Of a DNA stretch of 64,000 bases, positions 40,029 through 63,128 are shown piece after piece (position 1 is the first letter of the stretch; each line of letters starts with the position of its first letter). The stretch is from Perna viridis (lineage: Eukaryota), in the NCBI GenBank assembly GCA_037379345.1, contig CM074522.1, forward strand, positions 19,034,001 to 19,098,000, given 5' to 3'. Under the pieces are notes generated by a model. It made no database searches, had not been told where the DNA came from, and saw nothing but the letters and a program-made list of their open reading frames with translations. The position numbers and the translations under genes were made by a program.

Positions 40029-43000
40029 TCAGTCAAATGCAGGATCCCTGGGTTTAACTGGTACCCTGACATTCGCTGGTCTTTTAATATCAACACCAAA
40101 CATCCGGCGCAATATCGCCCCTCGTCTTTTATTTCGGATCTCTCTAATCCGAAGAAACATGCGCATGACCAGAACGAAGGCGATAATTGTAAATATCATA
40201 CTCAGCAGGGTGAAGAGGTAGATAATGATATCAAGTACGGCGATACACGAATGTCCACTTTCAATACCTACAATACAAGAAATATGCTTATTGTTTTATT
40301 TTAATAGGAGTTTAGCCTATGCCTATGACGGACGGAGCTCATTCTTTGTTTACGGTGCACCGCCATGAAGTCTCATTCGGTGAGAAAAATATGTGAGACT
40401 TTCATTTGGGAAAGCTTAATACATTTCTACACAGTCAATAATATTAAATAAATAAATATAAAATCGTATCCATCGACGTATTAAAAGACAAAACAGTGCC
40501 TCTGCACTGAAGTCTTGCGCAAGCGTCAACTTCCGTGTCGACACTTTTTAGCCACTTATAGTTCTGGTCTTACATTCTACATATATGGGATGTCGCTGAC
40601 GCTATGTTCATATAAGTATGCATGTAACACTGTGTGTTAATAATAATGTTATGACAAGAGTTAACTATGACGAACTAAAACTGATGTTTTCCTTCCATTT
40701 TTGTCAAGTGTGATGGACGTGTTTTTCAACAAACGGTCGTCATTCCAATGGAACAACTTGTGCTCCTCTACTTGCTGACCTATTCCTTCACTGTTTTGAG
40801 GCTGACTTTATAGCTGATCTGATCCGAAAGAAAGAACATCGTTTAGCTAGATCCTTTAATCTCAGTTTCCGCTATATAGATGACGTATTATCTTTAAACA
40901 ATCCTAATTTCGGGGATTTGATACATCGCATCTACGCTAAAGAACTTGAGATAAAGGATACTACAGACATTGTGAACTCGGCCTCATATCTTGACCTACA
41001 CTTACAGATCGATGGTAAAGAAACACTATTGACCAAACTTTACGACAAACGTGATGACTTTTCATTCAGAATCGTCAACTTTTCTTTCATCTGTGGCAAC
41101 ATCCCTTCGGCACCTGCGTATGGAGTGTTCATATCACAACTCATACGTTATGCCAGAGCTTGCTGAAATTACGCAGACTTTTTTGTATCGCGCTAGAATT
41201 CTAACAAATAGCTTAATTCTGGAACAGGGTTATGTTGCTACAAGATTGAAGTCATCACTATAGAAGTTTTATGGTCGTCATCATTGATCCATCTGCGCCA
41301 TGAAAACTGATTTGTTCAACGTGTCACGTGTCATAGTTTTCGTTTCCTCTTTCGTCTACCCCGGACTTGAATTTTTATGAGCAACTCGGCGGGTGTTTCT
41401 AGAAAAGCAGAGGACGCTTACCCTACCGGTGCACCTGGTTCATGTTCCTAGTGTTGAATGGAATCCGATATGCTCATTTACTTTTGTTACTTCTTTGTAT
41501 GTATTATTTTAGTTGCTATTTGTTCTTTGTTGTGTTTGTCTGTTTTCCATGTCTGGCCTTTGTCCCTGGATTACATTCTTTTGATTTCCACTAGAATCTT
41601 GGTTCTCTTGATTACACTTTCACAGAATAAGAATGGAAATTGGGCATATGTCAAGACAACAATACGAAATCAGCCAAAAGCAACCTAAGAATTTTCGAGG
41701 TACAATGAGGACAGCTTCACATGTCAGACTGCAACTGACATGTAAAAAACATTTTACACTGCAGTTCTGCGGGTTAGTTGCCCTTCTGGACTCCAGTTAT
41801 TAACATAAATATAAACTGTAATTGAAAATCAAGTCAAGATATTCCTTACATGGAGCAAGAGTAAAATATAGTTTTTTCATCAGTTTTCGGGAATAAACAT
41901 CGTTAAACTGGAATTTAAGAGTTCCCGCACACAGACATCTATTTTTATGAATTTGTTTCATCCCATTTAAACTTTAGAGAACGTGGTGAAGTTCTCCCAT
42001 TTACGTTAAAGGTTACGATAAATATTGTTAAAATATCTAAATATTTATAAGGGACGACCATTAAATTCTTAAAGGGGCATGGCAAGTAAGATTATTTATT
42101 TTCATCATAATCTTGACAAGATTATTTATTTTCCATACTCATAAAAAGAGTATAACTTTTGTCTACGAAAATTTAAATCTGCATATCCGGGTTACCAAAA
42201 TATGTTGTTTGTATTCTATATCAAAGCATGTGTTACTTTTTATGTTTATTATTGAAGACATCATTAAATGAAGTTCATGGCATAGTGTCTACTATATCCG
42301 ACAGGTGGCGTTCACGGACCTGAACGATGTCCGAATTTTAGCGGAAAATGTTGCGATAGACATTTTACTAGACAGATTTGCATATCTATATGTATCTAAA
42401 TGAAATCTACCATTGCAAAACTTCACATTACCCCAGTAAGGTCATTTATGTACAGAGGATTCCATATAATCGCATGCCTGATTATTACACATTTCTGTTA
42501 ATTGCATAGTATTTTCAAGAACCAAATCATTACACATCTCTCCCATGTTAAAAATTCCTCTTAATTGCATAGGTCTAAACAGACATTCCTATTTATTGCA
42601 TTTTTTTTTCAGGAAATGCTAAAAACATTTACACTTTCTGGCCTTAACGGTGTATTTTTAACGAGTACTCAATTAAAAGGTGTAGTTAATTAAACTCTTT
42701 GATATGATGTTTTTATAGTAAGAAAAAAATAATATTTTTAAAGCAACGCTGCAAATTTTATGGGCGTTTCCTTGATATTGACGTTACTTTTACCTAATGT
42801 TCCTGCGCATGGATCAGTTGATGTACATACACCGCTATAGTAGGCCGCAGCTCTATAATCTGAACAAAAAAAATAAAGTAAACAACAATTAGCGGGTTGT
42901 TGACATCTGCTTGTTTTATGCACCCAAAAAACGGGTAACAGTATAAACTCAGCTATTATTAAAGTCATTAGACATTGTTACAATTAGCAAAAATTAGCAC

Positions 43001-44403
43001 TAAAACATGACCAAAATGCAATTGTTCTGCAGTATTTGAAACATTCTACTGCTTAAACGAACATGACACTTAAGTTTCAATGTATATATGAAAACATTTT
43101 GTTATCCCAAACAAGATTGATATAACTTTAAAGAAGCCATATCAATTACCCTTTCAGACCCATGTAATTGCCCAAGTGCTTCAGACCCATGTAATTGCCC
43201 AAGTGCTTCAGACCCATGTAATTGCCCAAGCACTTCGCGCAATAAACAATAAACACATGGAAAATTTATGTTATTTTTCAAAAGTCAAAATTTGTATTAT
43301 TGCCAATTCTTAAAAATAAAAAAAGATAGTGAGAGTTTGAAAGATATGGTCCGAGGCTTTTCTTTGCTCTTCTTAATTTATCCATAAGCAAAGGCTTCCA
43401 ACAAAACGAGAGTCTTGTTTGACAGCAATATACCGTATTAATTTAAGCAGTTTAGAGTTCAAGAAAAAAACATTTCATGGACATATTTCAAACATTCAAA
43501 ATGAATATGGACAGTTTATGTGTACTTACTGACGTATGCTGCTGGCGATGTACACACAATGTCACCATCCAGGGTTATGTTGTTATCTTGTGCATAGGTA
43601 ATGAACCACAGTTCGCTACAAGAACACGCCCAAGACATCCCGTCAAGACGCACATACTCAAGCGAAGTAGCCCCAGAAAATAAGCCTGACGGTATGCTAT
43701 TAAACTCGTTGTAACTAAGGGAAAGATTGGTCAGTTTAGTATTTTTACTAAACGTGTCCTGTCGTACCGATGTCATGTGTAGATTGTCCAGAACCAGGGT
43801 GGCTACATTTGCTTGTGTGAAGAGACCGCCGAATTCCAGTGTATCGTCAACTAGGTTTACATTTCGTAAAATAAATTCTCCTTTGGGTTCGGGGCTGGTG
43901 GCAGAGGTCAGCTTTTTTACGTCTAAGCCAAAAAACGTATCCGGTACCATATTATCAATTGATCCCCCATCGAAAATAAACGAGTTAAGTTCTCCAAAGT
44001 GAGAGAATACCTCTGCAGGAAGTGATAAAATATTACAGTGTTGAATGGTAAGTTCTTCAACCCACCCGAAGTCGGTGAAAGCATCTTTAACCATTACTAC
44101 GGAACCTCCAGAAACACAGAGTATCCGGAGTGAGGCCGGGTATCGTTTGTCAAAATTAGCTGTATTCATCGCACTAAATCCGGAGAACACCGGACCATTT
44201 GGCGCCAAATTGGTTAGCTCCCCTGAAAAATCCTTGATGAAAATTCGCTGTGGCTGTACCGAAAATTGTGAAAATGCCAGTGGCAGTGCCCATCCTCGGC
44301 TGTCGCATGTGTACAGTATTGTTGTCGTATCATAGGTGCAGCCTGTTGGGTTACCGCTCACGTCACATAAAAATGTCAGTATCAGCAGCCATTGAAGTTC
44401 CAT
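40029..44403 (-). CDS. LRR single-pass membrane protein, paralog D (about 392 aa, short Arg-rich tail); exons 44403-43530, 42859-42794, 40267-40029
   Basis: Signal peptide MELQWLLILTFLCDVSG, LRRs (LTNLSLSYNEFNSIPSGLF), LRRCT WACSC...C. The 66-nt exon 2 reads NYRAAAYYSGVCTSTDPCAGTL. Exon 3 reads GIESGHSCIAVLDIIIYLFTLLSMIFTIIAFVLVMRMFLRIREIRNKRRGAILRR...PAFD*. Phase-1 GT-AG introns as in the paralogs. Confidence 0.88.
40715..41622 (+). mobile_element. 5'-truncated Penelope-like retroelement (RT motifs plus thumb and structured 3' end), antisense within intron 2 of LRR paralog D
   Basis: FQQTV.IPM..CAPLLADLFL...SFRYIDDVLSLNNP...ELEIKDTT...ASYLDL...LYDKRDDFSF.IVNF...NIPSAPAYGVFISQLIRYARAC, with frameshifts and stops. 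No C-terminal GIY-YIG follows the RT. Confidence 0.85.
43153..43233 (+). repeat. 27-bp tandem repeat, 3 copies
   Basis: ttcagacccatgtaattgcccaagtgc repeated three times in intron 1 of paralog D. Confidence 0.85.
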
Positions 44404-46994
44404 GTTTACTCTATTGTGTCATTGTTTTGGTTTCCGTATTTCTGTTATGCCAGTGGTTCCGCCATCTTTTGTTTTAAGGTTAGATGTTCAAATGTAGGAC
44501 ACAATCGTAGATTACGTATATTCAATAATCTTAAATAATCTTCTCAAGTTAACCGTAGATTAAGTTTCTAACTATGTATAATGAGCTTATTTCATATCTC
44601 AACGATTCATGCCTGTATTAATACGCTAGCTCTATACAACAGAACATTCCAGCCATAATTACTTTTAAAGTTCTCTTTCAAGTGGCAAACACTTAGAATG
44701 CAACTTTTTCCTTTTTTTGTGGAAAAAGGTGGCGTGAAAGGTTTTTCATAGGTTTAGTCATACACGTGCGTTTTAAACAGCATTCTGGTCCTGTCATATT
44801 CCTAAAATTTGGTCCTAGCACTGATAATATCAAATAGTTGCTTTCAAACAAAATCTTTTCAGTGGCGGATCTAGAAAGGTTCCTACTGGTCAAAAGAGGG
44901 GGCTAAGGTGAACTCAAATTTCTTCCCCTTTAAATTCATCAAGCAAACTTTTAGAGCAAGAGCAACACGATATCCACCATTAAAGATACTCGTCTCCCTA
45001 GAATCCGCATATATGTCTTAGCATTATTAGTTCAAAAATCTTCGTCACTTTTTGTTTATTTCAAACAAGTCGTTTATTGTTTGGTAGCGTCGTACTGTCG
45101 TGTGAGGCGTTGATCTCACCCACACAGCTGCTGAGAGAATAAATTGGGAAGTGATAGAAAGCATAAAGAATGGGATTATGTATAGCGAAAAATATAAAAG
45201 CAGAATGAAGATTTTCAACCCTCCCCCCAAAAAAAAATGGTGGTGTTTATGAACTCTGAACCGGAAATGGATAAATTAAACAGTGATAGACATGAATTGA
45301 TTTATCTCCCTTTGTAATTAATAAAATTAATAACTAATAATTGATAATTAATAAAATTAATATATTAATTAAAAAAAATTCACAGATTATACATTTCATT
45401 TTCTTTGAAATTTTCACAATTTTGGCACAATGTTAATTTTTATCGCATGATTTTATTGCTGTCATATCAAGCTCAAGATTAAATCCAGGCGTTTTTTTTC
45501 AATTATACAGTTGACTGATGTAGTATGTTTTATGGTGATTTTTATCCTGTAAATTTGATTTTGTCATTTTTTGATCATTTTCCACAATATCCAAATTATT
45601 TACTATGTTAACGTCATGATACTTTGTTTAATTTAATTATTTGGCCCTAGTCTTAATCGTTTTTGACAGGAACTCATTTGTGCCTCGTGTCGGGGAGCTG
45701 CATTACTGTTGCTAGATTATTACCGGATTATACTCCCTTGCAATATGACGGGTGTCGCTTGCGATGCAGGAAACGCTTACCCGATGTCACTTCCGTTTTT
45801 TTATGGAAGAACATATTGCTAATGTTTTATTTTTTTTGTGTGGCGTATGTGTAATATACGTTTGCTATGTGTATATGTAGATCGTTTTCCTTTCCTGTGT
45901 TCATGTTTAAGCCATGCATGTTTTTGATTTTAATGTTATTGAATTATCCCATTGCTGACGATTCGGTTATTTTTTTTGCCGATCTATTGTGTAAGGTAAT
46001 ATTTAATCTGGCTTCCTGGTCAATATTATAAGCGACCCTAGGATCGCTAAAATATAGAGAGAAGTTGGCTCATTTTCACCAAAATTGGCAAATTTTGCAA
46101 CTAGGTGGGATCCGGGGTTGGAATTTGTATTGGTTGTTCCATTTATGTAAAAGATTGCATTCATGCATTGCGTCCGTATTATTGCTTAAAGAAAAATATC
46201 ATATGACCTTCCATGTAACTTGGAATCGGTTTATTACCAGGTGCCGATCTTTCAGGGATTACAAATTTGTCTTTATTTATAAGGTGGCTAGGATTAAAGT
46301 TTCATATCCCGGCCTTTTCATTCGAATTTCTATCCCTGACTTTAAGTTTGTTTCTAGATCTTGAGAAAAAAACTGTCAGTGGATTTTACACTACGAATTG
46401 TAAATATTACTTATTTTATTCCAAATCCGAGCTACTTATCTTAAAACTTTTCCTAAAACCTCATTCGATATAAGATGTTAATTTTGGTTCGGGCCTAAAA
46501 AGTTCAAAGAAAATGTACTAGTCTAATGTGTGCATTTCAACTAAATTTGACCTATTAATATCTTGAAAAGTCAAACTTTCATGCGTATTTCTGAAGGTTA
46601 TTAGGTTTTATACTTGGATAATACATTAAAATGTTCGGGTTGCTTTCTTCATGTGCAACACCTTTCACACATTTTGCCTGTTTCTAAGACCGAGGAGTAT
46701 TAAAACGAATCCAGGGTGTTCATTAATATCAAACAAATTAAACAAAACAATATAAATTCTGTTAATACCGATAAATTTTCACATGTTTAGACGGAAACGA
46801 TTTTATGATTTCTTTCTATATTTTTTGTGATATAGAAGAAAATGCCAAATATCTTTTATATATTTTTCCAAATTTTCTGTTTACAATTATTAACATAGCC
46901 AAAATTTATTTCAGGACTATGTTACAGTCTTGTCGAAGTTATTGCAATAATAAAAACAGCAATCCAATAATTTCCGAATTTATTTGACAAGAAC

Positions 46995-49900
46995 TTAAAC
47001 ATAGCACGTATTATTGTAATCTGTTTCGGAGAAGTCCGATAAAGAGTCGGAATCGTATTCATCGTTAGCCGCTTCATCGTCTGTACGATCGTCGTCATCG
47101 ATCTCTTCCTCTAAATCATCAGGGAGTTTTATATTCCTAATATCATATTCCTTGTTGATGTCTATACACGTTTCTGTGATATATTCATCGTCATCGTCCT
47201 CATCATCTACCGATGTTTCATCTGTATTGCAACTCACATTATCTTTCATTATTTCATCTAACATTCCTGATTTTATATTTTCTATTTTATCTTCATGTTC
47301 CCAGTTTGGATCATATTCGTCGCTGTCGTCCGATTCACAAGGCTTCAATTCAATATCTTCGTTAAACTCTTCCTTTTTGAAAACTCTCGACTTCCACAAA
47401 TCATCCGAATAGTTATCCTTAAGGTCCTCGATGTAGGTCTTCATTCGCTCAATCTCTTGGTTCAGTTTTAAAACGATCTTGTCCGCCATTACCGTTCTGA
47501 TTTTCATGACGGCCTGTATCTTGTTTTCCTCTTTTTTCTCCTTGCACATGATGATAATTATAGTACCGAAAGCCGTGAATGAAAAGACGGTTGAGAAGAA
47601 GGAGATGATAAGTTGGAATAAATCTAACCCTTTAACGCATTTATCGCCAATCACAATACCTAGAAAGAAAAAAATATTGAAGCACCAAGCAACAAGGTAA
47701 TTTGTACAGTAGGTTTAAGATCAAATTTTAAACAAAAATACTGGACCATACAGCTGAAAGAAAAAAAATTATAAACATGAGTTTTCGGGTTGTATCTTCG
47801 ATAGATTGAGGGTCGGTTACATTTTTATTACCGCAACGGCACGTGCATCGCGTAACCTTTGCTTGTAACCAAGGCCTTAAGTTGTATACATTCAGGACAA
47901 CAACCCGCAGTGCACAGTGCCAGACCAGTGTGCTTGCCACTTCCTCAATGTGTCAGTCTTGCTTAGTTGATTAGAGTAAAAAACAGGGAAAAATAGACAC
48001 ATACAACAAAGAACACGAAGTAACCAAAATAATACGCACAAAAAAGTAAATGAGCTGACCGGACTCCACTAAAAATGGAAGCATTGACCAGGTGCACCGG
48101 TAGGGTAAGCGTCCTGTGCTTTTCTATGAACTCCCAGCGAGTTGCTCATAAAATGTCAAATAACATACTGAAGCAGTCAAGAAAAGCCACAGGCTGTGTA
48201 CAATTACTGTCTTACAAATTAACAAAATTATCTACTCCTTAGACGCTTCCCTTCGATCCGCTTTTGAACATCATTAGATGACATTATCTTACCCAGTTTT
48301 CCATCACAGGGACTGTAATTCTCACATTCTGCCTGGTAAAACGATGCTGCACGCTTGCCTGAAAAATCAAACATGATATATTAATAAGTGAAAAGGGTTT
48401 ATTGTTTTTTTTGCACTTAAGTAGGCGGGGAGTTTAATGTTAGATAAAGCCAAAGATGAAGGTTTAAGATTCCTATCTATTTGCTACCGGATGTGCAAAT
48501 CATCACGAGCACAATTTTGAAAGCAAACTACTAGTAAATGGACTTCTTTCAAACAGTCAAAATCATTATAAATTTATATAATTAGAAAACACTACTGGCT
48601 AAAATAATGACTGTAATGTCTATGCACAGTCAAAATATAACTGAAGCAAACAAATTTTGTCTACTTAAACGCTCATTTTGTTTTACTTAATCATATTCTG
48701 ACTATATCAACACTTAAAATGACCATTTAAAACATCAAAGCAAATGTAGTGTTGAGTAGGACACAAAATGTCTAATACAACGTTTTGTTGTGTTGAGGTT
48801 GACACATTTTGTCTACCTCAACGCAAAAAGTGGTATCGTAGTCATTTTATTTCTAAATCAACCAAAATGACTAATTCAACACTTTTTACCATTGTGGTGG
48901 ACAAAATGTATTTTTCATGGACCGAAAAGTGTTGATTGAGACATTTTGTGTCTGTATCAGTCAAAAAAACGACTGTTGATGGTCATATCAGTCATTATTT
49001 GGCCCAGTAGTGAAAGAGAATATTGACTTTGTGTTCGATCTTTCGTCGGAACACATTTGGGTATGTTTTTTTCAATATTTGATCCATGAAAAATATGACA
49101 GTTGAGTAGAAATTATTTTATTGGATGAAATGAGTTATACGAAACTGATATTACTTGTCTTACCTTCATAGCTACTTGGAGATGCACAAATAATATCACC
49201 ATCCAGAGTTATGTTGTTTTTCTTCGTGTAAGATATAAACCAGAGATTCTCACAGCTACAGTGCCAATTGGTGCTCCAGACATTGACATTACTGAGTTTA
49301 GAAAGAGCAGAAAACAAATTGTTTCCTAAACTACTCACACTATTTGAGCTCAGTGAGATTGTTTGTAAGTTTGGAACACCAGAAAAAACTGTTTTACTTA
49401 TTGAAGTCAGGGAAAGGTTATCTAATACAACGGTGGAAGCATTGTTAGTCATGAATAAAGCACCGGACGCCAACTGACCGGAAGTCATTTTACTATTTCT
49501 TATAATAAATTCTCCCTTTGGAGTTGGGGCACTTGCAATTTTCTGCACATTTAGTCCTTTGAAACTCTCTGCCACCATATTAGAAATAGATCCGCCTTCA
49601 ATGGTAAAAGAATTGACATTGCCAATGTGTTCAAAAACTGCAGTTGGCAATGATGCTATGTCACAATCTATAATAGACATTTCTTCCACCCATCCAAGAT
49701 CTGAAAAGGCATCTTTCGTAATTATGAGAATGCCATTAACGTAGCACATGATAGTTAAAGATGGCGAGTATCTTGCATCAAAAGAAGCCGTATTAATCGC
49801 ATTGAAACCACTGAAAGTAGGCCCCGACGGCGCAGTTGCAGGAAGTTCTCCGCTGACATCTTTTAGAAGCAGACGTTGAGGTTGTACGGGGAAGTCGGTG

Positions 49901-50031
49901 AAGGTCAGCGGCAGTGCCCATAGTCGAGCGGAACATGTGTACAATATGGTACTTGCATCATATGTACATCCGGTCGGATTCAAATTAACATGTGGTAGGA
50001 TCAAAAGAACCACCAAAAACTGGAAATTCAT
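46995..50031 (-). CDS. LRR single-pass membrane protein, paralog C (about 532 aa, Asp/Glu-rich tail); exons 50031-49164, 48358-48293, 47659-46995
   Basis: ATG at 50031 gives signal peptide MNFQFLVVLLILPHVNL followed by NPTGC, as in the paralogs. LRRs and WHCSC LRRCT. The 66-nt exon 2 reads GKRAASFYQAECENYSPCDGKL. TM LFQLIISFFSTVFSFTAFGTIIIIM, then an acidic tail ending NTCYV*. Confidence 0.88.
47972..48160 (-). mobile_element. Penelope-like element 3'-end fragment
   Basis: ggactccactaaaa..gaccaggtgcaccggtagggtaagcgtcctgtgcttttcta..gagttgctcataaaa. Confidence 0.7.
48590..49012. mobile_element. CACTA/EnSpm-type MITE in intron 1 of paralog C
   Basis: aaa|CACTACTGGCTAAAATAATGACTG ... CAGTCATTATTTGGCCCAGTAGTG|aaa. 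CACTA termini with a short A target duplication. Confidence 0.75.
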
Positions 50032-50649
50032 ACCTTGTCCGGTATGAATTAGACCGTAAACCACATTGTTTGTAATTGACGTTTGATTCCGCAAGATTAC
50101 CAACCTAAACACCAATATCAACTTGCAAGATTGTCGCCATTTTGAAGTTGTGTTTACGGAAAGTCTCATTTAAACCGCAGCTTGAACTTTTTAGTTAAAC
50201 TGGGTCATCTGCTGCTTTACTTCTCGATTAATAAAACCATAATTATCGACCAACTTATGGATTAAAATGTATATTCGTCCTTAATTATTCAGGGTCTATG
50301 AGTCAAATACCTCAATTGGAATTAAAGAATATTGAAAATTAAAAAAAAAAAAACGGATAAAATGAAATGACTATGATTTTTTTAGTTTTGAAAATAGCAT
50401 TTTATTCACCACACACACGATCACAGTTTTTTTACTTTTCATCATAGTTCTTGTTGTTTTGTTACTAGAGTTGATGTCTTATGCCACAGACTATGTTCAA
50501 TTTGCAACTCCGAAGATTTAGCATGTTGTAGCTGTAAACGGCTTAGCCAAATTTCCATTCATGCTGTAGACTTGGGGTATTGCTCTCGATTTTAGGCAGA
50601 GTATTGAGTGAACTTACGTCTTTTTTATTTGCTTTCTTTAGTTTGCTTA

Positions 50650-50782
50650 NNNNNNNNNNNNNNNNNNNNNNNNNNNNNNNNNNNNNNNNNNNNNNNNNNN
50701 NNNNNNNNNNNNNNNNNNNNNNNNNNNNNNNNNNNNNNNNNNNNNNNNNNNNNNNNNNNNNNNNNNNNNNNNNNNNNNNNNN
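50650..50782. other. Assembly gap (133 N)
   Basis: Run of N between paralogs C and B. Confidence 0.99.
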
Positions 50783-53700
50783 TCGTCTTTTTTAATCATG
50801 TATTTTCTTGTATGTCTCATTGTCAGTTCATATCGTTCTCGAATATGTGTTTCCCAACAGATTTTCCTCTTTGGTTTTCCTTATTTGAATTTACCCGTTT
50901 GTTTTTTCTTTCCTCGTTTATTCAGATTTTTTATCAATTCAGATCGAAAATCAGAATTGATATAGTAGTCACCAGAGCCTTTAAATTTGTAAAGCCTGAT
51001 AGCATCTGCAATTATCTTACACTACCGCAAAAAAAATAGTCCCGTTGGCATACCCCATTTAGGTTCAAATGCAGATAGTTAGTTCCATTTAATAGATATT
51101 CTTAAAATATTAATTTATAAAATTTGATTTATGTAATTTACTTCAATAAACAAACCCAATAAACACATTTTACTGCGAACTAAATATACTGATTAAGTAG
51201 AATTATATAATTATCAACGATCCAATTAAAAATAATTGTTCTCTAACCTCCTATCGGTACAAATATCCCTGTTTATTTCTATGCATTTATCCGAATCAAG
51301 GAGTTATATATAAATCCTTTCCCGGATAAATCACTAGTCGTTCACTGTTGACTATTTATCTTCAGACGCATAATAAACCGTTTGATGTTTAGCTAGAAAT
51401 GAAAATTATGCGCGACTATAAGGCAACGACTATTTTTATGTTGGGAGGGGGACTGGGATTATTTCGAAAAAAAATAAAATTATTTCGAATTTGAGGAATT
51501 TTTTTACTCAGCCATGGACAGAAAAAAATATGATCAAATATCCCCCCATTATAATATTCACCTTAATGTAGATTTTCTCTGCCAAAAAATATATACATTG
51601 TATACTTCTTCGCGTCTGTGTGAAAAAAAATTCTAACGCAACATAAAATCCCACCCCCAGAAAATAGTCTGTGCCTAGTCTTCGATCATAGAAATGATGC
51701 TGAGTACCAATTGGAATAACTGTCTTCTGATACTTCACGTAGGCCTTGGTGAGATATTTCCAAAAAGGGTGCTGTGGATCCGATCAAGAAACTTATATAA
51801 ATGCGTTCCATACTATTATTTGTCCTTAATTTTTGGCCATTTTTTTACGAAATGGTAGCATACCCCGAAAGCATCCCGATGTAACACTCAATGTATCGTA
51901 CATTTTTATTACGGTTACCGCTTCATGACATTGGAAGTCGGGGGATGATAAATCAAAAACCTTGCTTAGACGATGGCATATGCATTTCGATAATGCATTT
52001 CTCTGAAATAGTGTCAATCTGTGGTCTGGTGATATTTATTTTTTGTAATAATCATTCTATTTGGCAATTTTGGCCATGTGTAAAGATAAAGTAGCGCAGG
52101 TGCAGGAGCATTAAAAGAGCATGGCTAGTGTTTTCTATATTCTAAGACTTTGGAGTTTATGTTCATGTACGCGTGTCTAGAACTAGGTGCTTTGGAACTA
52201 AGTGCTTTAAATGATACATAGGTGTCTCTGCGATAACTTGTAGCACTTATCAAAAGAGGAATGTAGCCAGTTGAGAGGGACATGTATCTAAGGACATGAA
52301 TTATTTCAATGATTTTGGCTTAAGTTTGAATAATTTGTCAGGCAGCTTCGACTTGGGGTCTATAAATTAAATTTCGACTTGAAAATTTATAAACTAGGAA
52401 AGGCCAACTAGTACTTTATAGTTAAATTACGCAACTTATCTCGGAGAGTTTTGTATAAATTCATCTAGGTATTCCGTGTTAACCGACATCGAACCTGGAT
52501 ATTACGTAAACTGACGTATGGCAACGATGTATCATGAATTGGGTGTTCATTTTTTTGTAACATTTTTCGAAATCTGAATTGTGAATTTAAAATAAAAAAT
52601 CAGTTGAATATTAACTATTTAGAACTATATAATCTTGAGTTAAAATGCGTTTGAATTTGACCCCCGTGCTTTCCTTTTTTCCCTTGTCTTGTAATTTGAC
52701 GATTATTTGAGGCGTAAAATTCAAACGACCGATATAAATTGATTCAGTACGTGAGTACTTTGGTTCACCGTTGTTTTTGTTTTATTTGATTCATCTCATA
52801 TATTTTTCGGAATTAAAAAGATCACTCTTGCTATATATGCTTCCTCAAAGTTTTGAATTTGATTTGACTCCGATTGATTCTTATTTTTAAATAGCAATTC
52901 AGCTAAGAATCATGCAAAATTTGATTCATGGTTGGAAAGCCTTCGGCTACATATTTTTATTTTTGATGTTATGTTTAAAATGTAAATAGTTAACATAGAT
53001 AAACGTGTGGCTTTTCATAAAACCCGTCCTCTTAAAAGATAAATACTGTATATAATGTACTGTAGAATTCCAAATTAAGGGAGATAACTCTGTAAATTAC
53101 ACTTAAATACAATAGAAGCTATTCAAAAGCTATTTCTTCGGAGCAGACAGAATGGAATGAATAATTATTATACATTTCATCATTAAGACTTATAAAGCAA
53201 CTTATTAACAAAAATAAAAATTTGTAGCCCTTGTTTTTGTATGTATTTTTGATTTCATTCTATTTCAAATGAAAGGTTGATAGGCTTTGATGAAATTAAA
53301 TATGATGAAAACATATCACTGATTTCAACAGTTATGTCCCTTACCCTAGGTCTACCTCAAGTGTCGGTTCACCTGTATGTTAAATACTTGTAGTTCAATT
53401 CTGAGGTATGTATAAAATTTTGATTTCTTACCCCAATAAGTTCTCTTTGAATATACGCCTAAAATTGCTGTTTTCAGCAGGGCCGTCTTCTATGATTACA
53501 ATATTATACAAGTCATGTAGTATTAGTGTTGAGCGGTTGTTTCCAATAGATGTTTACAATATCTGTTTTATTTACAGTTGAAAGTAAACCCTTGAAATTT
53601 ATAAATAAAAGGACATATTGCATTCGTTATAAACATTATCATAGTGTAAAAGGTCATAAACTTTGTCAGAAAATGGGTTGTGTGTTTTTTAATCCCTGTT

Positions 53701-53801
53701 TATTTGAACGTCAACATCGATAACTTTTTTATAGTCCAAGTGGCCTCTATTTTGTAATGCACACTCCCGAAGTACATACAATGAGTAGATAAAGTGACCG
53801 G

Positions 53802-56800
53802 TCAAAAATTAAGACCTGTGGTTTTTCTTCTATGTGGAACAACCCATATTCCAGACACAGGGTGAACATTCTCCAACGCTTTCAATTTATCCTCCAATGC
53901 TCTATTAAGTCTGTCGTTCCTTAAATCTGCAAGGTCGATAGAACCATCGTCGTTATCGATATCGTTGTTAAAACCTACGTAATCGTCGATATTATCATTG
54001 TACATTTCGTCAATGCCATTTTCAACAGGATTTGTCTTTGTTGGATATGATACATCGTCTAAATCATTACCCGTGTTTTGAGAATCAGTATTTTCGTTTC
54101 CGGTTTCAGGGGTCACTTTCCTTCCGCCTTTTGACAGTGCTATCATCAGAGCTAGCTTTCTTTTTGCATTTAAGAAATTTCCCTTGTAACTCTTAGGTTC
54201 AAATTCGTGGTCATTTTGGTCCATTTTTTGTTGCATAAGTTTGGCAAACTTGCTTTCTCTCGACTCTTCTACGACGATAACTTCTTCCTCGAAATATTTT
54301 CGAATCTGAGTTTTTCGCCGGCAAAGATAAATTATTATGGTAAGTGAGATACCCGTCATGACAAGAATAGGCACAAAAAGTCCATATGAAACGATATCGA
54401 TCGCTTTCAAACACGTCTCTTGAATAACGATGCCTGTAAATATAGGGTATTTGTTGCTATAATTATTTTATTTCAAAGCATCATGTAAATAATTGTAACA
54501 GTGACATAAGCATGCACACGAAGTCAACAAGTGTATGTTATAACTACATGTAGTCGACGAGCATTGTTATTGTACATGTTCATGTACCACACCGAAGGAC
54601 AAATATTTTTGTTCTACTCAAACCCTACCTCGCAGAAGTATATATATATTCGTGCTCACCACGCAATTTCTACGGGGTTTACTTTTTATTCGCTTTTTTT
54701 TTTTGTCAAAAAATGAATTGGCCAAGATCTGGACATCCTCCCAAGTCAGGGTTTTGAGTCCACCCTCGCTCACTCATACCCATGATATCACTCATTCATA
54801 TTTAGCGGGTATCGTCCAGCGCCATCTAGTGAGTTACTTAAATTTAACCCGGATCCAAAACCCAATCAAATCACTCGTAATAGAAACTCTTCGATAAAAC
54901 TTACAAAGTGGCTACACATAACGTCATTTTTTTTCAGTAAAGACTCTAAACAGATTCTACAGTTATCATTTTTGCTCACATTGCATTATTCATGACATCA
55001 TACAACTTTCAGTTATTATACCGGATCGTCCATTACCTCGTATTATTGCTCACCTTTCCACAGAATTTTATATTGAATCGATTTTCATTGGTGCTTCTCA
55101 CCCGGAGAAGCAATTAATCGGAATTGGCTGGACGATACCCGCTAAATATGAATGAGTGATGTCATGGGTTTTGAGGGAGCGAGGGTGGACTCAAAACCCT
55201 GGCTTGGGGGGATGACATCTGGAGTAAAAAAAGGATATTATTTTGATCCACATATGGCCCTTTTGATGTAGTACACCTTGTAGTGTTACAGAAGAAAACA
55301 TTAGTGTCTTCTAAACCTATTCCACGCATCTACTAACTCCCCCTCCCGTATACTAATGTTAACAATCTCGCGTTTTTTTTTCAGTTTTACTTAATATTAT
55401 AATATCCAGGTTACGATAGAGAAAAAACTCACCAAGTTCTCCGTTACAAATATCATATTTAAGACAGTTTGTAGCATAAAATGATACTGCCCTTTTGTCT
55501 GAAATACACATAAAACAAGAAATAACCAGATTTGAATTCGTAAACATTCTATTGGGTTCTTCACCATGGATTGGAGTACTTAGCGCTTGTCTTCACAATT
55601 TTTAGAAATAAATTATTTTACTTTATTTAACGCTCGAATGCTTTAAAAAGATAAATCCTGCCCCTGTAAGACATATTTAATAGATTAAAATTAAAGTCAT
55701 CTTGTATTTTAATCAATGATATTGAAATTTTATATGGAATTTAATGTTACATGTAGTAATTTATCAATTGATTATAGTACACAGGAACAGATTGCAATAT
55801 TTATGTTTTCATATATTTAAACACTTAGAAACAAATCTTTTAATCAACAATAAATGAAAACCATACTGCTTTCATACATATTCACGAAAGGCATGTAATT
55901 ACCATATTAATCATATTATTATTTTTTTTTACCTTTTTTCGTGAATTGATTTATTAGTCCTACACATATGGGTTTTTTTTATTACGGTCTAACACACGAG
56001 GCAAAACGGTTTTTTTAAGCTTAACACATATGTAACCATACGTTGCAACTCTTCTTGTGTATACGTACTTGCATATCCTGATGGCAATGAACAGATGAAA
56101 TCTCCAGTTAGTGTTAAATTGTTCTCAATGGCAAATGGAATGAACCAAAGGTTGTCACAAGTACAACTCCATGAAACTCCCCACATGCTGACGTGTGACA
56201 AAGAATGAAGGCCTGAAAACAAAAACGATGGGATGCTGGTGAAATTATTGTGATTTAAAGTTATGTTTTTAATATTTGGAATACCATAGAACGTGTCTTT
56301 TGAGATGGATGTTAGCTGCAGACCGTCTAAAACCACTGACGATGCGTTTGCTACATTGTAGAGAACCCCGAATGGAAGCTGACCGGAAGTTACTACTGAG
56401 TCCCTAATGACGAATTCGCCTTTAGGTTGCGGAGCACTGGTGATTTTTATGACGTTTAGACTCCGGAAACTATCTGCAACCATGTTTGTGATTGAGCCAC
56501 CATAAATTTGGAAAGAGTTGAGAGTACCGATGTGCTGAAATACGGATACTGGCACAGACAATATGTCACAATCTGTGATAGCTACCTCTTCAACAAAGCC
56601 GAAGTCTTCGAAGGTATCCTTTGTAATGATTAGAAAACCAGAAGCAAGACACATAATTGTCAAAGACGGAGAGTATCTAGAATCAAACGTCGCCGTGTTT
56701 ATGGCGCTAAATCCTGTAAAAGTCGGTCCAAGTGGAGCCGTTCCAGGAAGTTCACCACTGACATCATTTAATAATATTCTCTGAGGTTGTACTGTGAAAT

Positions 56801-56942
56801 CGGTGAACTGTAAAGGCAGGCTCCAGTACCTCATGCTACATGTATATAAAAGGGTGCTAGTTTCGTAGGAACATCCGACTGGATTGCCGCGGATAAAAGG
56901 CAGGAGGTTCAGAACAAAGACCGATTTACACAATATATTCAT
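53802..56942 (-). CDS. LRR single-pass membrane protein, paralog B (about 523 aa); exons 56942-56069, 55498-55433, 54433-53802
   Basis: Signal peptide MNILCKSVFVLNLLPFIRG then NPVGC. LRRs (IKNITLNHNNFTSIPSFLF) and WSCTC LRRCT. The 66-nt exon 2 reads NKRAVSFYATNCLKYDICNGEL. TM IVSYGLFVPILVMTGISLTIIIYL; tail ends TTGLNF*. Confidence 0.88.
54734..55214. mobile_element. MITE with ~87-bp TIRs in intron 2 of paralog B
   Basis: catcctcccaagtcagggttttgagtccaccctcgctc...agcgggtatcgtccagc / gctggacgatacccgct...gagcgagggtggactcaaaaccctggcttggggggatg. Confidence 0.8.
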
Positions 56943-59058: not shown

Positions 59059-61539
59059 ACGTAAGGTCTAAAATTAACTGAAACAACAAATAAACAAATC
59101 ATAAAATTCACTCAGTAATATACCCATTTCTTCTTTATGGAATACCTCAAGTTATTTTATAGATAGCAATGTTTTATCGAAAGAAACCAGTGTAATAAAT
59201 TTCGATAATTCACACCGTGAAATAAATTCGGTAATTTCGCTCTCGGACTTTCTCCCGCCAAAATGTCACAACTTTGATATCAATCCGCCGTTCCCAAATT
59301 TTTAAAATTATGTTGAAATCAACAAGAATTATGAAGGAACTCTATATAATACATGTAAATAGGATAAGGAATTGGTTATCGTGTATAACCAAATTATGAT
59401 CACTCATGCCACGAACGCAGCAAGATTTAACTCGTGCGCGGAAAAGGTTCCGCACACTCATTAAATCTAGGCGTTCTTCGGCACTCGTGATCATATTTTG
59501 GTTATTCACTCCTTCCAATTAATTATCCCATTAATACTACTTATATAAAAATGAGATATCCAATTAAGGAACGTTCGCAGTTACTGAAAGCTACCAGGAC
59601 ATATTAAGAATTATTGATCATAATCGGTCACTTCCATTCCAGTAGTTTAAGACTGGAATTGAAGTAGTAACGTAGAGTATTGAACGGACAAGACGTGGGA
59701 TATATTACAATACTTAATAATTATTTAGTTTTTACGTATTGCAATTAGGGGCCGAATATCTGTATTTTTGAAAACTGGGTTCAAAGGATAGACAATGAAT
59801 TGACAATCGTATACTTTTCGAATAAATATATTAAGGGCAGTAAGTTGCTAAATCTATTGGATTTTGTTTGAAAGACTGTTTAAAAAAAACCAAAAACAAA
59901 ACAAAACAAAAAAAATGGGTGATCATTAAGCTTCTATGGTAATGGTAAAATTCTGATAATTCTTATTTTTGATTTTTATCACCACACCAAATTTAAAACA
60001 AATAAGTCAGAAAGTTTCTGAATTAGACCAATACTACTATTTGATGTTAATCGTTCAAATAAGATATACGTTTTAGGGCCGGAAGCGCCACCTGAAAGGT
60101 GTTAATTTTACCAAAATTTTAGTTCTGTAATGAGGTTTATATTCGATCTACTTTATGGTTAAATGAAACGGGAAAATCTTTTTTTTCTGTCAACCAAGAT
60201 ATTTTTGTGATATGTGAATATATAAATAACAGTCTTTCACCGTGTATTTATTAATTTTGAATTATAGGAAAGAATAGAAGGGTCATAGTTTTACGTATAA
60301 TTTTTGTCGAAACATTTAAAACTCGAAAGAAGTTTAGTTTTTTTTAGTTTATACTTGAAAATTTCGAAACTTTTCAATGAAACTCGATTTTTTTAGTTAA
60401 ACTTTGAACAAAATCAACTATTTCAAGTTTAAAAAAAAGTATGTACCTAATATGATTTCCTTGGATAATACGGAAGCGTACAAGCGCCACCTATAATTTT
60501 TTAAAAAGTTTTTTGCAGCATCGTTTCTTCATTGGATTCTTTCTGAAAATACCTGCCTGTGTTTTTTTTTATCAGATTCGTGGAATCTCCGAGTTTTTAA
60601 CAACATGGATTAACAGGTACTTTATCAAGCGCCAAGACAGCCTCTGACGTTCGAAATTCAATCTATACACTCCAGCCAGCCCTCTCATAAAATGCAAGAA
60701 TCTTGCAAAGTTGAAAAAAAATGAATGATTCCATCTGAATTTAATAATATCCGAAAAATTTCGAAAAACCTGTCTGCACCGGTTAGTAAGAGAGGAAATG
60801 AACGACCGCCGCTGCACGGAGCTTGTTCCTTTATAGTCTTGTTAACAGACATAAACATATAAAGAAGGTGTCAACTGAAGATATATATATATATATTGAT
60901 ATTGACATATTCAACATCGTATCGTTTCTTGTTGACTAGTGATATTATGCCTACCGAAGTTTACTGCTATCTGCTGCATTACTGCATTAATTGAACTATT
61001 AGAGTATAACAAATGCGCATGCATACATTTTTCTTTATCATAAATTGTTCAAATCTTGTGACATCAAATCATTTTTAAAATTGATAAATCGGTCGTGAAT
61101 GTACATGTAATCAAGGCGACCGTCAGTGATTTTGACTAAAAACCAACATATGTTTATTTTACAACTCATGGAAATATTGGCCTTCATTTGTTTGTTAAAG
61201 TAAAATTAAAATATATATTTTTGCACAGGTTAATTACAAGTTAATCTGGTTTGCTGCAATTTTTTTTTGTTTGATTCATATGCAGTTTATTTACAAATCA
61301 TGCAATACAGCGATCTCCCATTTAAGCCCAGGGGAGCTATAAAGGGGTTCCTCGATTTCTTACACCCTTAACACCCAGTGATTGTGGGAAGACATACAAA
61401 TAAACCTCCCATTATTCAAATTAAACACTTATACATAAAATATTCTATATCTTGAACAATATCACAATTTATTTATTGTAAGTACCAGCCACATGCACCT
61501 CGATTAAATCAGTGAACACAGCAGTTCTGATAACCTGTT

Positions 61540-62232
61540 CAAAATAAGAAATAATTAATCTTGATCCCTCGAGATATTATATCATTCGCACTAGAATGTT
61601 GTCTTGTTTCCTCAAAACTTTATACTGTTCCCACAAGAGAGGGAACTAGTTCCATCTTGTTTTATATACGTCTCAGAATGTGACGACTCTATTCACTACA
61701 CTGTTCCATCGGATCAAATTGATACAGGGAAGATATATAAACGTATAGATAGGTCTGAAACGATTTTAGAACTGTCAAATTTGCGATGCAAATGTTTGGT
61801 CGTTCCCTCCGCGGGACTCGAACTCGTACCGCTGTGACATCTATGGCAACACTGCCTGCACGAAGTCCAGCGCCCTAGACCACTCGGCCAGCTAAGCTAT
61901 ATATACATCGTTCCCTTAAGATGATATATCATTCCCAAAAGATGATATGTCGTTTCCTCAAGATGATCTGTAATTCCCTTAATATATTATGTCGTTCCCT
62001 CAAGATAATACGTAACTCTATAACTACTTTGTGGGAGCGATATATTATCTTGAGGGAAATGACATATTATCCTGTTGGAACGATAATATAACTTCCTTGT
62101 GGGAATGACATATTATTTGAGGGAACGATATAACTTCCATAAGGGAACTACATACTATATTGTGGGAACGACATATTATTTTGAGGAAATGACATAAGAA
62201 ATATTTTTTGCATGGCTGCATTCTTCTACCGT
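61540..62232. repeat. Foldback-like array of ~22-bp tcgttccctcaagataat / ttgagggaacgatata units, interrupted by a tRNA-derived element
   Basis: Direct units at about 61560-61640 and 61909-62010, inverted units at 62030-62195. Confidence 0.55.
61665..61908 (-). mobile_element. tRNA-derived repeat (SINE-like head with Pol III A and B boxes at 61804-61898)
   Basis: Minus strand reads GCTTAGC-TGGCCGAGTGG-TCTAGGGCGCTGGAC...GAGTTCGAGTCCCGCGGAGGG. A and B boxes are present but the acceptor stem does not pair. Confidence 0.6.
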
Positions 62233-62706
62233 ACTGAACAGTCATCAGAACTGGGATTTTTTTTAACCGCGAATTGCGGATTGATGTAAATGACGTCACC
62301 ATGTTATATATACTAAATAACTTGGTTTACTCAAAGAGAACCAACTTATCAAAAATTTTGACTATTATAAATCAAATCAAATCATGCAAAGATAACTGTC
62401 ATCCGTGTATTGGGTTTGAAAAAAAGATGGCGGAATAATATTGGAATTCTCGTAAGGAATTATAAAATTCGATTAATTTAAACACAATAATTGTAAACAC
62501 TAAAGTACATCGTATCTAAAAAAAAAGAAAAGAAACACATAACGATTGACAAGAAAAAAAAACTATAACTTTAATACTTATTTTGCGAAAATCGCAGGTT
62601 AAGTGACTGACGTCGATTAAGTCAGTAGTCAGTCAAATCAGCTGATTATATAATTTAAGCACATATTACATATAATTCTCTTCTATATATGCAATGTATC
62701 CTTTAG

Positions 62707-63128
62707 TTAGAAATTCATCGCTTCAGCCGGTGTCATAAACCGTCGAACATTAATAACTTTGTTCACTGCAGCCTTATATCTGCTGTTACGCCTATTGTCT
62801 ACAACATCCAATTCTTCGTCGTCGATAAATGATCTTTCGGACTTGGGTCCTGCGACATTTTTCCATGCAGACCCACTGAGTTTACGACCGTTAGGTTTCG
62901 GTTCGCCGTCGTCAACATCATCGTCTCCTTTTCTCCTTCTCGACTTCCTTTTCTTCCTCTCACCTTTCTTCTCGGGATCACTTTCTGGTTGTACCTGTGC
63001 AATTTTTAGCTTCCGGTAGTCGATGACGACCAAAACGAAAGTAAAAGTAGCAATCCCTATCACGAACGGTGTAATACTATATATAAATATCTCTGTTGTT
63101 GACATACAGCGACCCCCGCTCACTACTC
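62707..63128 (-). CDS. Last (TM plus tail) exon of LRR membrane protein paralog A; upstream exons lie beyond the window
   Basis: Phase-1 acceptor ttttaacAG at 63130-63129. GVVSGGRC aligns with GIESGHSC/GIVIGDKC/GIVIQETC of the other paralogs. TM IFIYSITPFVIGIATFTFVLVVI, then a Lys/Arg-rich tail ending AEAMNF*. Confidence 0.8.

What the first reader, a model, noticed from the sequence alone, without database searches (positions are those of the whole stretch)
40029..63128. Tandem array of at least 4 TIR-less LRR-TM receptors: conserved ectodomain, unrelated cytoplasmic tails
Seen: three complete genes and a fourth last exon share one layout (868-874-nt exon 1, exactly 66-nt exon 2, TM plus tail exon 3, all phase-1 introns). 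The ectodomains align end to end: NPxGCxYxxxTxLYTC, WxLPLxFxxFxVQPQR, DxSGEL, GPxFxGF, FDxRYxxSLxIxC, a PKGEF insert within the LRRs, and the WxCxC cap. After the TM nothing aligns: tails run from about 44 to about 185 aa. Established: Toll-like receptors need a TIR domain, which is absent here. The signal peptide-LRR-LRRCT-TM-polybasic architecture instead resembles BK/Slo gamma subunits (LRRC26/38/52/55) and TPBG/5T4. Inference: an apparently uncharacterised lineage-specific family in which a similar extracellular module is coupled to different intracellular outputs. This is the reverse of typical immune arrays, which vary the ectodomain and keep the signalling domain.
Basis: partly seen in the sequence, partly recalled or inferred. 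Interest (0 to 1): 0.8.

Follow-up and report, generated by a model that had tools for sequence, protein, structure and literature searches.

The report
Old mollusc LRR membrane-protein gene array
The window holds the first three and a third genes of an 11-gene tandem array for an uncharacterised, mollusc-wide family of LRR membrane proteins; the tails look unrelated only among the copies in this window, so it is a solid but fairly ordinary gene family.

Summary
Genes A, B and C and the last exon of D lie on the minus strand at the stated places. Each has three exons, GT-AG introns and phase-1 junctions. The N gap is intergenic.

The array is larger than reported: 11 intact copies over about 79 kb, all on one strand, with no other copy in the genome.

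The ectodomain is a generic capped LRR solenoid. No TIR domain lies within 9 Mb. BK-gamma (LRRC26) and 5T4 are not preferred matches.

The family occurs in mussels, scallops, pearl oyster, ark clam, abalone and a whelk. Its members carry only automatic, mutually inconsistent names.

"Unrelated tails" is true among A-F and I. However:
- the A and B tails are conserved in Mytilus;
- G, H, J and K share a roughly 50-residue tail motif with scallop and ark-clam proteins, and H and J match them better in the tail than in the ectodomain;
- positions assigned to the LRR binding face vary more between paralogues than the rest of the domain.

So the idea of one ligand module coupled to many outputs is not supported.

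RNA-seq reads of this species gave no coverage of A or B, so expression here is unproven.

Verdict: a new member of a known kind, of modest interest.

The parts
43530..44403 (-). Gene A exon 1 (874 nt): start codon, signal peptide, LRRNT, 8 LRRs and most of LRRCT. It ends in phase 1 at a GT donor.
   Evidence: Pfam LRR_8 E 7.5e-15
42794..42859 (-). Gene A exon 2 (66 nt, phase 1/1): last LRRCT cysteine plus one stalk cysteine.
   Evidence: It is the only AG..GT open 66-mer conserved between copies.
40029..40267 (-). Gene A exon 3: juxtamembrane cysteine, TM helix, 45-aa basic tail and stop codon at 40029-40031.
   Evidence: The tail is 60% identical to Mytilus trossulus P0035 (E 1e-12).
49164..50031 (-). 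Gene B exon 1 (868 nt).
   Evidence: Pfam LRR_8
48293..48358 (-). Gene B exon 2 (66 nt).
46995..47659 (-). Gene B exon 3: TM and a 184-aa tail. The proximal part is predicted helical in the Mytilus homologue; the rest is acidic and of low complexity.
   Evidence: The tail is homologous to the M. coruscus P0004 tail. The helix is seen in the AF2 model of P0004.
56069..56942 (-). Gene C exon 1 (874 nt).
55433..55498 (-). Gene C exon 2 (66 nt).
53802..54433 (-). Gene C exon 3: TM and a 172-aa tail.
   Evidence: No homologue of this tail was found other than itself.
62707..63128 (-). Gene D exon 3: TM and a 104-aa tail. D's exons 1 and 2 lie just beyond the window, at extended coordinates 65058-65916 and 64423-64488.
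   Evidence: There is weak tail similarity to scallop P0080, centred on the RKLSGS.W stretch (E 0.03).
50650..50782 (.). Assembly gap (133 N) in the B-C intergenic region. It is 619 nt upstream of B's start codon and 3.0 kb downstream of C's stop codon.
   Evidence: No family fragment lies next to it.

Best explanation
What it is. The window holds the proximal end of an 11-gene head-to-tail array, A-K. It spans about 79 kb, from window position 40029 to about 54.7 kb beyond the window's end, all on the minus strand.

Each gene has three exons. Each encodes a type I membrane protein of 383-532 aa with these parts:
- a signal peptide;
- a capped LRR solenoid of about 265 aa (LRRNT, 8 irregular LRRs, LRRCT);
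- a short cysteine-bonded stalk split across exons 2 and 3;
- one TM helix;
- a cytoplasmic tail with no known domain.

The family is old, uncharacterised and found across molluscs. It has two clades that separated before mussels and scallops diverged. A-F form clade 1 and G-K form clade 2.

How it most likely works (inferred). The proteins are cell-surface binding proteins or co-receptors. Each paralogue has its own ligand face, because the positions assigned to the concave face differ between paralogues. Signalling or trafficking runs through short motifs in the tail, not through an enzymatic or TIR domain.

The ancestral tail is kept in G, H, J and K and in scallop, ark-clam and pearl-oyster proteins. 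It has three parts:
- a basic amphipathic helix that continues the TM helix (KK.N[ST]SW.KVQ[DE]AL.RGG);
- a QKPPA proline stretch;
- a GW at or near the C-terminus.

In clade 1 the tails have diverged beyond recognition between paralogues, but they remain conserved between orthologues.

Shown: architecture, copy number, phylogeny, tail conservation and synteny. Inferred: surface location, ligand binding, the roles of the motifs and any partner.
For: - Copy number and integrity: 11 intact copies, 33 exons and no fragments.
- Fold: LRR solenoid with caps, pLDDT about 90; VIA Z up to 21.6 over residues 15-285.
- Disulfide pairing: gene I and its orthologue P0096 lack the second Cys of the CxC motif, and I also lacks the first Cys of exon 2. 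This fits the C2-C4 disulfide of an LRRCT.
- Range: homologues occur in Mytilus species, Pecten, Ylistrum, Mizuhopecten, Pinctada, Tegillarca, Haliotis and Babylonia.
- Phylogeny: two clades with support of 99/97 and 94/98; A, B, C, G, H, I and J each have a closer orthologue in another species.
- Age and constraint: synonymous sites are saturated (pS 0.77-0.91) while pN is 0.26-0.43.
- Gene structure elsewhere: the M. coruscus gene has exons of 868, 60 and 479 nt with phase-1 junctions. A 1328-nt contig of a relative carries an uninterrupted 405-aa ORF, as expected of a spliced mRNA.
- Synteny: in M. trossulus the A orthologue has a convergent CARD-caspase gene 5.3 kb downstream, as in the window. 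In a scallop two members are tandem.
- Tails: conservation shown. The helix is predicted to run on through the motif.
- Binding face: concave-assigned positions have entropy 1.87 bits against 1.56 bits for other non-core positions (permutation p 0.017); paralogue identity is 32% there against 39%.
Against: - Expression: no read of three RNA-seq runs of this species lies on an exon of A or B. Only 19-25% of each run was read and the tissue is unknown. The reads that did map belong to dispersed repeats. Expression in this animal is therefore unproven.
- Function: no ligand, partner or expression site is known for any member.
- Concave positions: they were assigned from the LRR motif and the DSSP strands, not from coordinates.
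- Tail motif: its roles are guesses. The clade-2 tail HMM does not detect the A-F tails above shuffled controls, so a common origin of all tails is not shown.
- Range: taxa outside molluscs were not tested exhaustively, because only the best 150 of 38,825 profile hits were visible.
Confidence: 0.7

Rival explanations
1. One reading: one conserved ligand-binding ectodomain is wired to different intracellular outputs through unrelated tails. This would be the reverse of immune receptor arrays.
For: Among A-F and I no tail aligns with another. Exon 1 aligns end to end.
Against: - Ectodomain identity is only 31-62%.
- The conserved columns are mostly Cys, Gly and core positions.
- Concave-assigned positions are the most variable class among paralogues.
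- Four of the 11 tails share one ancient motif.
- The duplications are very old, with saturated synonymous sites, so disordered tails would be expected to drift out of alignment anyway.
Confidence: 0.1
2. Innate-immune recognition or decoy receptors: TLR-like ectodomains without TIR, acting through a partner as RP105/CD180 or CD14-type LRR proteins do.
For: - TLR3, TLR13 and Toll are among the PDB sequence matches to the LRR-LRRCT part.
- Bivalves expand immune LRR genes in tandem (PMC10279657).
- A CARD-caspase gene is a conserved neighbour.
Against: - The matches to TLRs are generic and cover only profile positions 180-300.
- The array is ancient, with orthologues in other species (1:1 shown only for A), rather than a recent lineage-specific burst.
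- No immune-induced expression data exist.
Confidence: 0.15
3. Auxiliary subunits of ion channels, like the BK gamma subunits LRRC26/38/52/55, acting through the TM helix and the basic juxtamembrane residues.
For: - The layout is the same: a capped LRR domain, one TM helix and basic residues directly after the TM ([HY]T[RK]R in most members).
- A Cys-loop channel subunit gene lies 5 kb beyond gene K.
Against: - LRRC26 ranks 34th in the fold search (Z 16.3, rmsd 14.4) and is absent from the 60 best PDB sequence matches.
- Basic residues after a TM helix are the general positive-inside rule.
- Gene adjacency alone is weak evidence.
- No complex was modelled.
Confidence: 0.05
4. Silent or decaying copies: the array is not expressed in this species.
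For: There were no exon reads for A or B in three RNA-seq runs. Next to none of gene C's words occur in 18 small runs labelled RNA by a guess.
Against: - All 33 exons are intact with canonical splice sites.
- Tail reading frames of 172-184 codons stay open in DNA of 34% G+C.
- pN is far below pS.
- Orthologues and synteny are kept.
Confidence: 0.05

Closest known systems
Platelet GPIb-IX-V subunits (GPV, GPIb-beta, GPIX)
   Same: Type I membrane proteins with a capped LRR ectodomain, one TM helix and short tails without domains. GPIb-alpha is among the structural matches (Z 18.2). One scallop member is auto-named 'platelet glycoprotein V-like'. From memory, not tested here: GPIb-beta and GPV tails carry a basic juxtamembrane calmodulin-binding stretch and a PKA site. 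This recalls the basic helix and the RKLSGS or KK.NSS stretches seen here.
   Different: There is no sequence orthology. The N-terminal 180 residues match nothing outside the family. The three-exon phase-1 structure, the exon-2 cysteine stalk and the tail motif are the family's own.
BK channel gamma subunits (LRRC26/38/52/55)
   Same: Signal peptide, capped LRR domain, TM helix and basic residues after the TM.
   Different: This family has 8 LRRs rather than 6. LRRC26 ranks only 34th in the fold search (Z 16.3, rmsd 14.4). It is not among the 60 best PDB sequence matches. No link to a channel has been shown.
TPBG / 5T4
   Same: An LRR ectodomain with irregular repeats, a TM helix and a short tail. 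The fold match has Z 17.4 (rank 25).
   Different: It does not stand out from other LRR proteins. The tails in the array end in AFD, CYV, LNF, MNF or G-W-x, not in the PDZ-binding end that I recall for 5T4.
Toll-like receptors and the TIR-less RP105/CD180
   Same: An LRR plus LRRCT ectodomain and a single TM helix. TLR3, TLR13 and Toll match profile positions 180-300. RP105 is a structural match at Z 15.3.
   Different: There is no TIR domain. The ectodomain is much shorter, at 8 repeats. The only hit outside the array is a true TLR with E 1e-4.
Hagfish VLR-A and Nogo receptor 2 (the best structural matches)
   Same: The whole ectodomain (residues 14-288 of the model) superposes as a capped LRR solenoid: Z 21.6 and 20.3, 241-246 residues aligned, rmsd 3.6-3.7.
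   Different: Sequence identity is 15%. The family here has a TM helix and a cytoplasmic tail. The match shows the fold, not membership.

Membership tests
Toll-like receptor | Cytoplasmic TIR domain | tested here: not met
   Pfam finds nothing in the tails. Of 149 TIR hits in the genome, the nearest on this contig is 9.7 Mb away.
Toll-like receptor | LRR ectodomain with LRRCT, followed by one TM helix | tested here: met
   LRR_8 and LRR_5, AF2 solenoid, hydrophobic 21-mer and predicted helix.
BK gamma subunits (LRRC26 family) | Specific sequence or structural kinship with LRRC26/38/52/55 | tested here: not met
   LRRC26 (8vav_E) ranks 34th, Z 16.3, rmsd 14.4. It is absent from the top 60 PDB sequence hits.
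BK gamma subunits (LRRC26 family) | Polybasic stretch directly after the TM helix | tested here: inconclusive
   [HY]T[RK]R follows the TM helix in most members. This is also the general positive-inside rule.
BK gamma subunits (LRRC26 family) | Binds Slo1 and shifts its gating | not testable with these tools
   No complex job was sent, because I do not claim binding.
TPBG / 5T4 | Specific kinship and a PDZ-binding C-terminus | tested here: not met
   4cnc_A ranks 25th, Z 17.4. The tail ends differ. The 5T4 C-terminal motif is recalled from memory.
Unnamed mollusc LRR-TM family (this array plus XP_063418414, XP_033764301, XP_060075669 and others) | Family-specific N-terminal half (P.GC..., PQR, F.GF, I.C, GGS, P.GEF) aligned end to end | tested here: met
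   Single full-length matches of 250-414 bits to about 25 cluster representatives. Alignments.
Unnamed mollusc LRR-TM family (this array plus XP_063418414, XP_033764301, XP_060075669 and others) | Three exons, both junctions in phase 1, with a short exon 2 carrying the stalk cysteines | tested here: met
   All 11 copies. M. coruscus gene with exons of 868, 60 and 479 nt.
Unnamed mollusc LRR-TM family (this array plus XP_063418414, XP_033764301, XP_060075669 and others) | Conserved tail: KK.N[ST]SW.KVQ[DE]AL.RGG, then QKPPA, then GW | tested here: inconclusive
   Met by G, H, J and K (E 1e-7 to 1e-17 against scallop and ark-clam tails). Not met by A-F and I, the copies in and near the window.

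The most novel reading that the evidence does not exclude
The roughly 50-residue tail kept since before mussels and scallops diverged is a new signalling or trafficking module of a mollusc-specific receptor family. It consists of a TM-continuous basic helix (KK.N[ST]SW.KVQ[DE]AL.RGG), a QKPPA stretch and a GW at or near the C-terminus. On this reading the clade-1 genes in this window (A-F) are neofunctionalised copies in which that module was exchanged for others.
Probability: 0.3. Interest if true: 0.5.

Novelty: new member of a known kind. Interest (0 to 1): 0.3.

Why it matters
The work defines an unnamed LRR membrane-protein family that public annotation scatters under seven unrelated automatic names: GPV-like, reticulon-4 receptor-like, phospholipase A2 inhibitor-like, slit-like, SLITRK3, LRRC70-like and LINGO-like.

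For this family it provides the gene structure, the two clades, the conserved synteny and a conserved tail motif that can be tested directly. That is useful for mollusc genome annotation and for anyone studying bivalve surface receptors.

It does not overturn anything. LRR-TM proteins with short, fast-evolving tails are common, and the "reverse immune array" idea does not survive a look at the whole array.

Tried and rejected
- **RNA support.** Three raw-read RNA-seq runs and one contig run were laid on 43400-49399. No exon was covered and no junction was seen. The reads at 46530-46569 and 48086-48126 belong to dispersed repeats; the latter has more than 2,700 candidate copies.
- **Common origin of all tails.** By eye there are [FW].[KR][VL] relics in C, D and E. 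An HMM of the clade-2 tail does not score the A-F tails above shuffled controls (A: 18 of 500 shuffles reach its score; the others 76 or more of 500). I dropped the claim.
- **Orthologue of C's tail.** A search with exon 3 of C found only itself.
- **dN/dS.** Synonymous sites are saturated in every pair, so only pN against pS is reported.
- **Wider searches.** The profile search of 1.8 billion proteins was swamped by giant multi-LRR proteins. Only single-stretch full-length hits were used. The ESM Atlas gave generic LRR clusters. A word-based search with a 13-sequence profile returned 7 hits.
- **Literature.** Nothing was found on this family or on its accessions.
- **Earlier findings of the scan.** Nothing on this array.
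- **Rfam.** Nothing in 45900-48300.
- **Complex modelling with Slo1 or between paralogues.** Not run, because I make no binding claim.
- **Joined models.** Exons were searched one by one by reference. Joined reading frames were built only inside local scripts, to check frames, cut out tails and build local alignments and the tree.


Full report
**1. Observation**

The ORF list shows three long minus-strand frames with near-identical layouts and four minus-strand frames with a hydrophobic stretch followed by charged sequence.

Each exon-1 frame runs into a GT donor one base after a conserved C..P..Y. codon string, which puts the junction in phase 1. In each intron there is exactly one open 66-nt AG..GT piece in phase 1/1 whose translation is conserved between copies. 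It reads KRA..Y...C....C.G.L. Each last exon starts at a polypyrimidine-AG acceptor, again in phase 1.

The models are:
- A: 44403-43530, 42859-42794, 40267-40029.
- B: 50031-49164, 48358-48293, 47659-46995.
- C: 56942-56069, 55498-55433, 54433-53802.
- D: exon 3 at 63128-62707.

The quoted motifs are all in the alignment.

The assembly gap (50650-50782) lies between B's start codon and C's stop codon. It touches no coding exon. Its length is unknown. I did not fill it.

**2. True extent**

A six-frame search of the assembly finds 11 exon-1 copies. All are on the minus strand of one contig, at C12:19,077,534-19,152,671. Only one other hit exists, and it is weak (E 1e-4). That hit sits in an open frame that also carries a TIR domain, so it is a real TLR.

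I fetched the next 80 kb and modelled all copies, A-K. Every one has:
- an intact exon 1 with a signal-peptide-like start;
- a donor at the same codon;
- a short exon 2 (66 nt in eight copies, 57 in G, 69 in J, 63 in K);
- a last exon with the TM helix and tail.

All introns are GT-AG and all 11 reading frames are open. tblastn with the 11 proteins against the 144 kb finds exactly these 33 exons and no fragments.

Gene I lacks the second Cys of the CxC motif, as does its orthologue P0096. Gene I also lacks the first Cys of exon 2. This fits a C2-C4 LRRCT disulfide that spans exons 1 and 2.

**3. What the protein is**

Pfam sees only LRR_8 and LRR_5 at residues 195-255, and nothing in the tails.

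I folded AlphaFold2 models of two full-length homologues, because joined models of the window's genes may not be submitted. They give a confident solenoid (pLDDT about 90) from the N-terminal cap to the LRRCT, then a stalk, a TM helix and a tail.

Foldseek and the exhaustive VIA search return a smooth continuum of LRR proteins:
- hagfish VLR-A, Z 21.6;
- Nogo receptor 2, Z 20.3;
- LGR4, LRRTM2, Toll, LRIG1 and Slitrk1, Z 18.9-19.8;
- GPIb-alpha, Z 18.2;
- 5T4, Z 17.4, rank 25;
- LRRC26, Z 16.3, rank 34, with rmsd 14.4.

A family profile against PDB sequences matches only profile positions 180-300. The best hits are LRRC15, LRRTM2, ALS and TLR3. The N-terminal half is therefore family-specific in sequence although it has an LRR fold. 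Nothing singles out BK gamma subunits or 5T4.

No TIR domain lies within 9 Mb.

**4. Relatives**

A word-based search with exon 1 found six proteins. One of them is a 468-aa Mytilus coruscus protein.

A full HMMER scan with a 14-sequence profile was dominated by giant multi-LRR proteins. It did contain about 25 cluster representatives that match the whole profile in one stretch. Their records place the family in:
- mussels: Mytilus trossulus, M. edulis, M. galloprovincialis, M. californianus and M. coruscus;
- scallops: Pecten maximus, Ylistrum balloti and Mizuhopecten yessoensis;
- the pearl oyster Pinctada imbricata;
- the ark clam Tegillarca granosa;
- the gastropods Haliotis rubra, H. asinina and Babylonia areolata.

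All are "uncharacterized" or carry mutually inconsistent automatic names. No paper mentions them.

**5. Phylogeny and age**

A maximum-likelihood tree of 42 ectodomains was rooted on the two gastropod sequences. It gives two bivalve clades:
- Clade 1 holds A-F plus six scallop sequences (support 99/97).
- Clade 2 holds G-K plus scallop, ark-clam and pearl-oyster sequences (support 94/98).

A, B, C, G, H, I and J each have a closer orthologue in another species than any paralogue in the array.

Synonymous sites are saturated in every paralogue pair (pS 0.77-0.91) while pN is 0.26-0.43. The duplications are therefore ancient, with no sign of recent gene conversion, and the ectodomains are under purifying selection.

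The M. coruscus gene has the same structure: exons of 868, 60 and 479 nt, both junctions in phase 1.

In M. trossulus the A orthologue has a convergent CARD-caspase gene 5.3 kb downstream. In the window a plus-strand caspase p20 exon at 35141-35359 lies below A's stop codon at 40029. The end of the array is thus positionally conserved between genera.

In the scallop Ylistrum three members share one 253-kb contig, and two of them are neighbours on one strand.

**6. The tails**

Tail-only BLAST finds nothing among A-F and I. An HMM of the clade-2 tail does not score them above shuffled controls.

The tails are not free-running, though.

- A's 45-residue tail is 60% identical to that of its Mytilus orthologue, while the ectodomain is 63% identical (E 1e-12).
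- B's tail matches the M. coruscus tail at E 1e-12. About the first 45 residues are the best conserved, and pN is 0.44 against pS of 0.85-0.96.
- D shares an RKLSGS.W stretch with scallop clade-1 proteins, but only weakly (E 0.03).
- G, H, J and K share one motif with each other and with scallop, ark-clam and pearl-oyster proteins. It reads [HY]TRR.L, then L.KK.N[ST]SW.KVQ[DE]AL.RGG, then QKPPA, then GW at or near the end.
- H is 56% identical to its scallop relative in the tail but 43% in the ectodomain. For J the figures are 47% and 41%.

In the AF2 model the TM helix continues through this motif to residue 378. The pLDDT is 80-92 and falls to 66. The proline-rich end is disordered.

C's tail has no detectable homologue apart from itself.

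**7. Is the ectodomain "the same module"?**

Identity to C falls from 62% (B) to 31-34% (G-K). The invariant columns are cysteines, glycines and core hydrophobic residues.

I assigned the solvent-facing x positions of the eight LxxLxLxxN strands from the motif and the DSSP strands. Among the 11 paralogues:
- these concave-assigned positions have an entropy of 1.87 bits;
- other non-core positions have 1.56 bits (permutation p 0.017);
- core positions have 0.88 bits.

Pairwise identity between paralogues is 32% at the concave positions, 39% at other non-core positions and 61% in the core. Between orthologues the three classes are similar: 65%, 70% and 77%.

This is a motif-based assignment, not a coordinate-based one. 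It argues that the scaffold is conserved and the presumed binding face is not.

**8. Expression**

Three 2026 RNA-seq runs of the same species were laid on 43400-49399. About a fifth to a quarter of each run was read, and the tissue is unknown. No read fell on an exon of A or B and no junction was seen.

The depth peaks are 40-nt pieces of dispersed repeats. The one at 48086-48126 has more than 2,700 candidate copies in the genome. Eighteen small runs, labelled RNA by a guess, held next to none of gene C's words.

Transcription in this animal is therefore unproven.

Indirect support comes from three observations:
- A 1328-nt contig of a relative carries an uninterrupted 405-aa family ORF, with all three parts joined as in a spliced mRNA.
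- The M. coruscus annotation has the same structure.
- The frames are intact and long in AT-rich DNA.

**9. Mechanism, and how sure**

Shown:
- type I LRR membrane-protein architecture;
- an ancient 11-gene array;
- a mollusc-wide family;
- tails conserved between orthologues;
- an ancestral tail motif in clade 2.

Inferred (about even odds): these are surface binding proteins or co-receptors with paralogue-specific ligands. They would act through short tail motifs or through a partner protein, as GPIb-IX-V, LINGO, RP105 or LRRC26 do.

The basic helix next to the membrane, with serines after a KK pair, could bind acidic lipids or calmodulin and be phosphorylated. That is a guess from established knowledge of GPIb-beta and GPV, recalled from memory and not tested here.

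Immune, channel-subunit and silent-gene readings are kept as rivals at 0.15, 0.05 and 0.05.

**10. Limits and rules observed**

- Joined spliced proteins were not sent to any search or fold tool. Exons were used one by one by reference, and full-length homologues from the databases stood in for folding.
- The N stretch was not filled or looked up.

**Verdict**

Its main idea is not supported. The feature is a new member of a known kind.

Noticed in passing
beyond the window: L019:2-895 (-) plus the end of L018; G000:C12:19157669-19158895: A 409-codon open frame about 5 kb beyond gene K, on the same strand, encodes a Cys-loop ligand-gated channel subunit (Neur_chan_LBD E 1e-36, Neur_chan_memb E 2e-10). 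Whether it sits next to the array by chance or for a reason is unknown.
   Followed up: partly
window 35141-35359 (+), within the scan's note at 34561-38239: A caspase p20 exon that ends in IHACPSG lies convergent to gene A. The same LRR-gene and CARD-caspase pair, in the same orientation, is found in Mytilus trossulus (L023). The pair is therefore a conserved synteny block.
   Followed up: partly
window 48040-48170 and 46530-46569: Short dispersed repeats lie in B's intron 2 and in the A-B spacer. The first is about 118 nt long, with more than 2,700 candidate copies at 88-91% identity. Pieces of both are abundant in RNA-seq reads and contigs. There is no Rfam match.
   Followed up: partly
window 63239-63702: A minisatellite in D's intron 2: 60-nt unit, 7.8 copies, 89% matches, with a higher-order period of 119-179 nt.
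   Followed up: no
window 43153-43230: A perfect 27-nt tandem repeat of 2.9 copies in A's intron 1.
   Followed up: no
window 50617-50649 and 50783-50795: Both flanks of the assembly gap carry the same 11-mer, CGTCTTTTTTA. This could mean that the two contig ends overlap or that a repeat sits there.
   Followed up: no
window 9065-9922 (+): A single 285-codon open frame that looks like a CLIC- or GST-type protein by eye. The scan has already noted it (s1-780864).
   Followed up: no
window 48600-48999: In one RNA-seq run (X4) reads lie on the plus strand in B's intron 1 at depth about 10. All of them carry the same 3-4 differences from the window. They probably come from a related copy elsewhere.
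   Followed up: no
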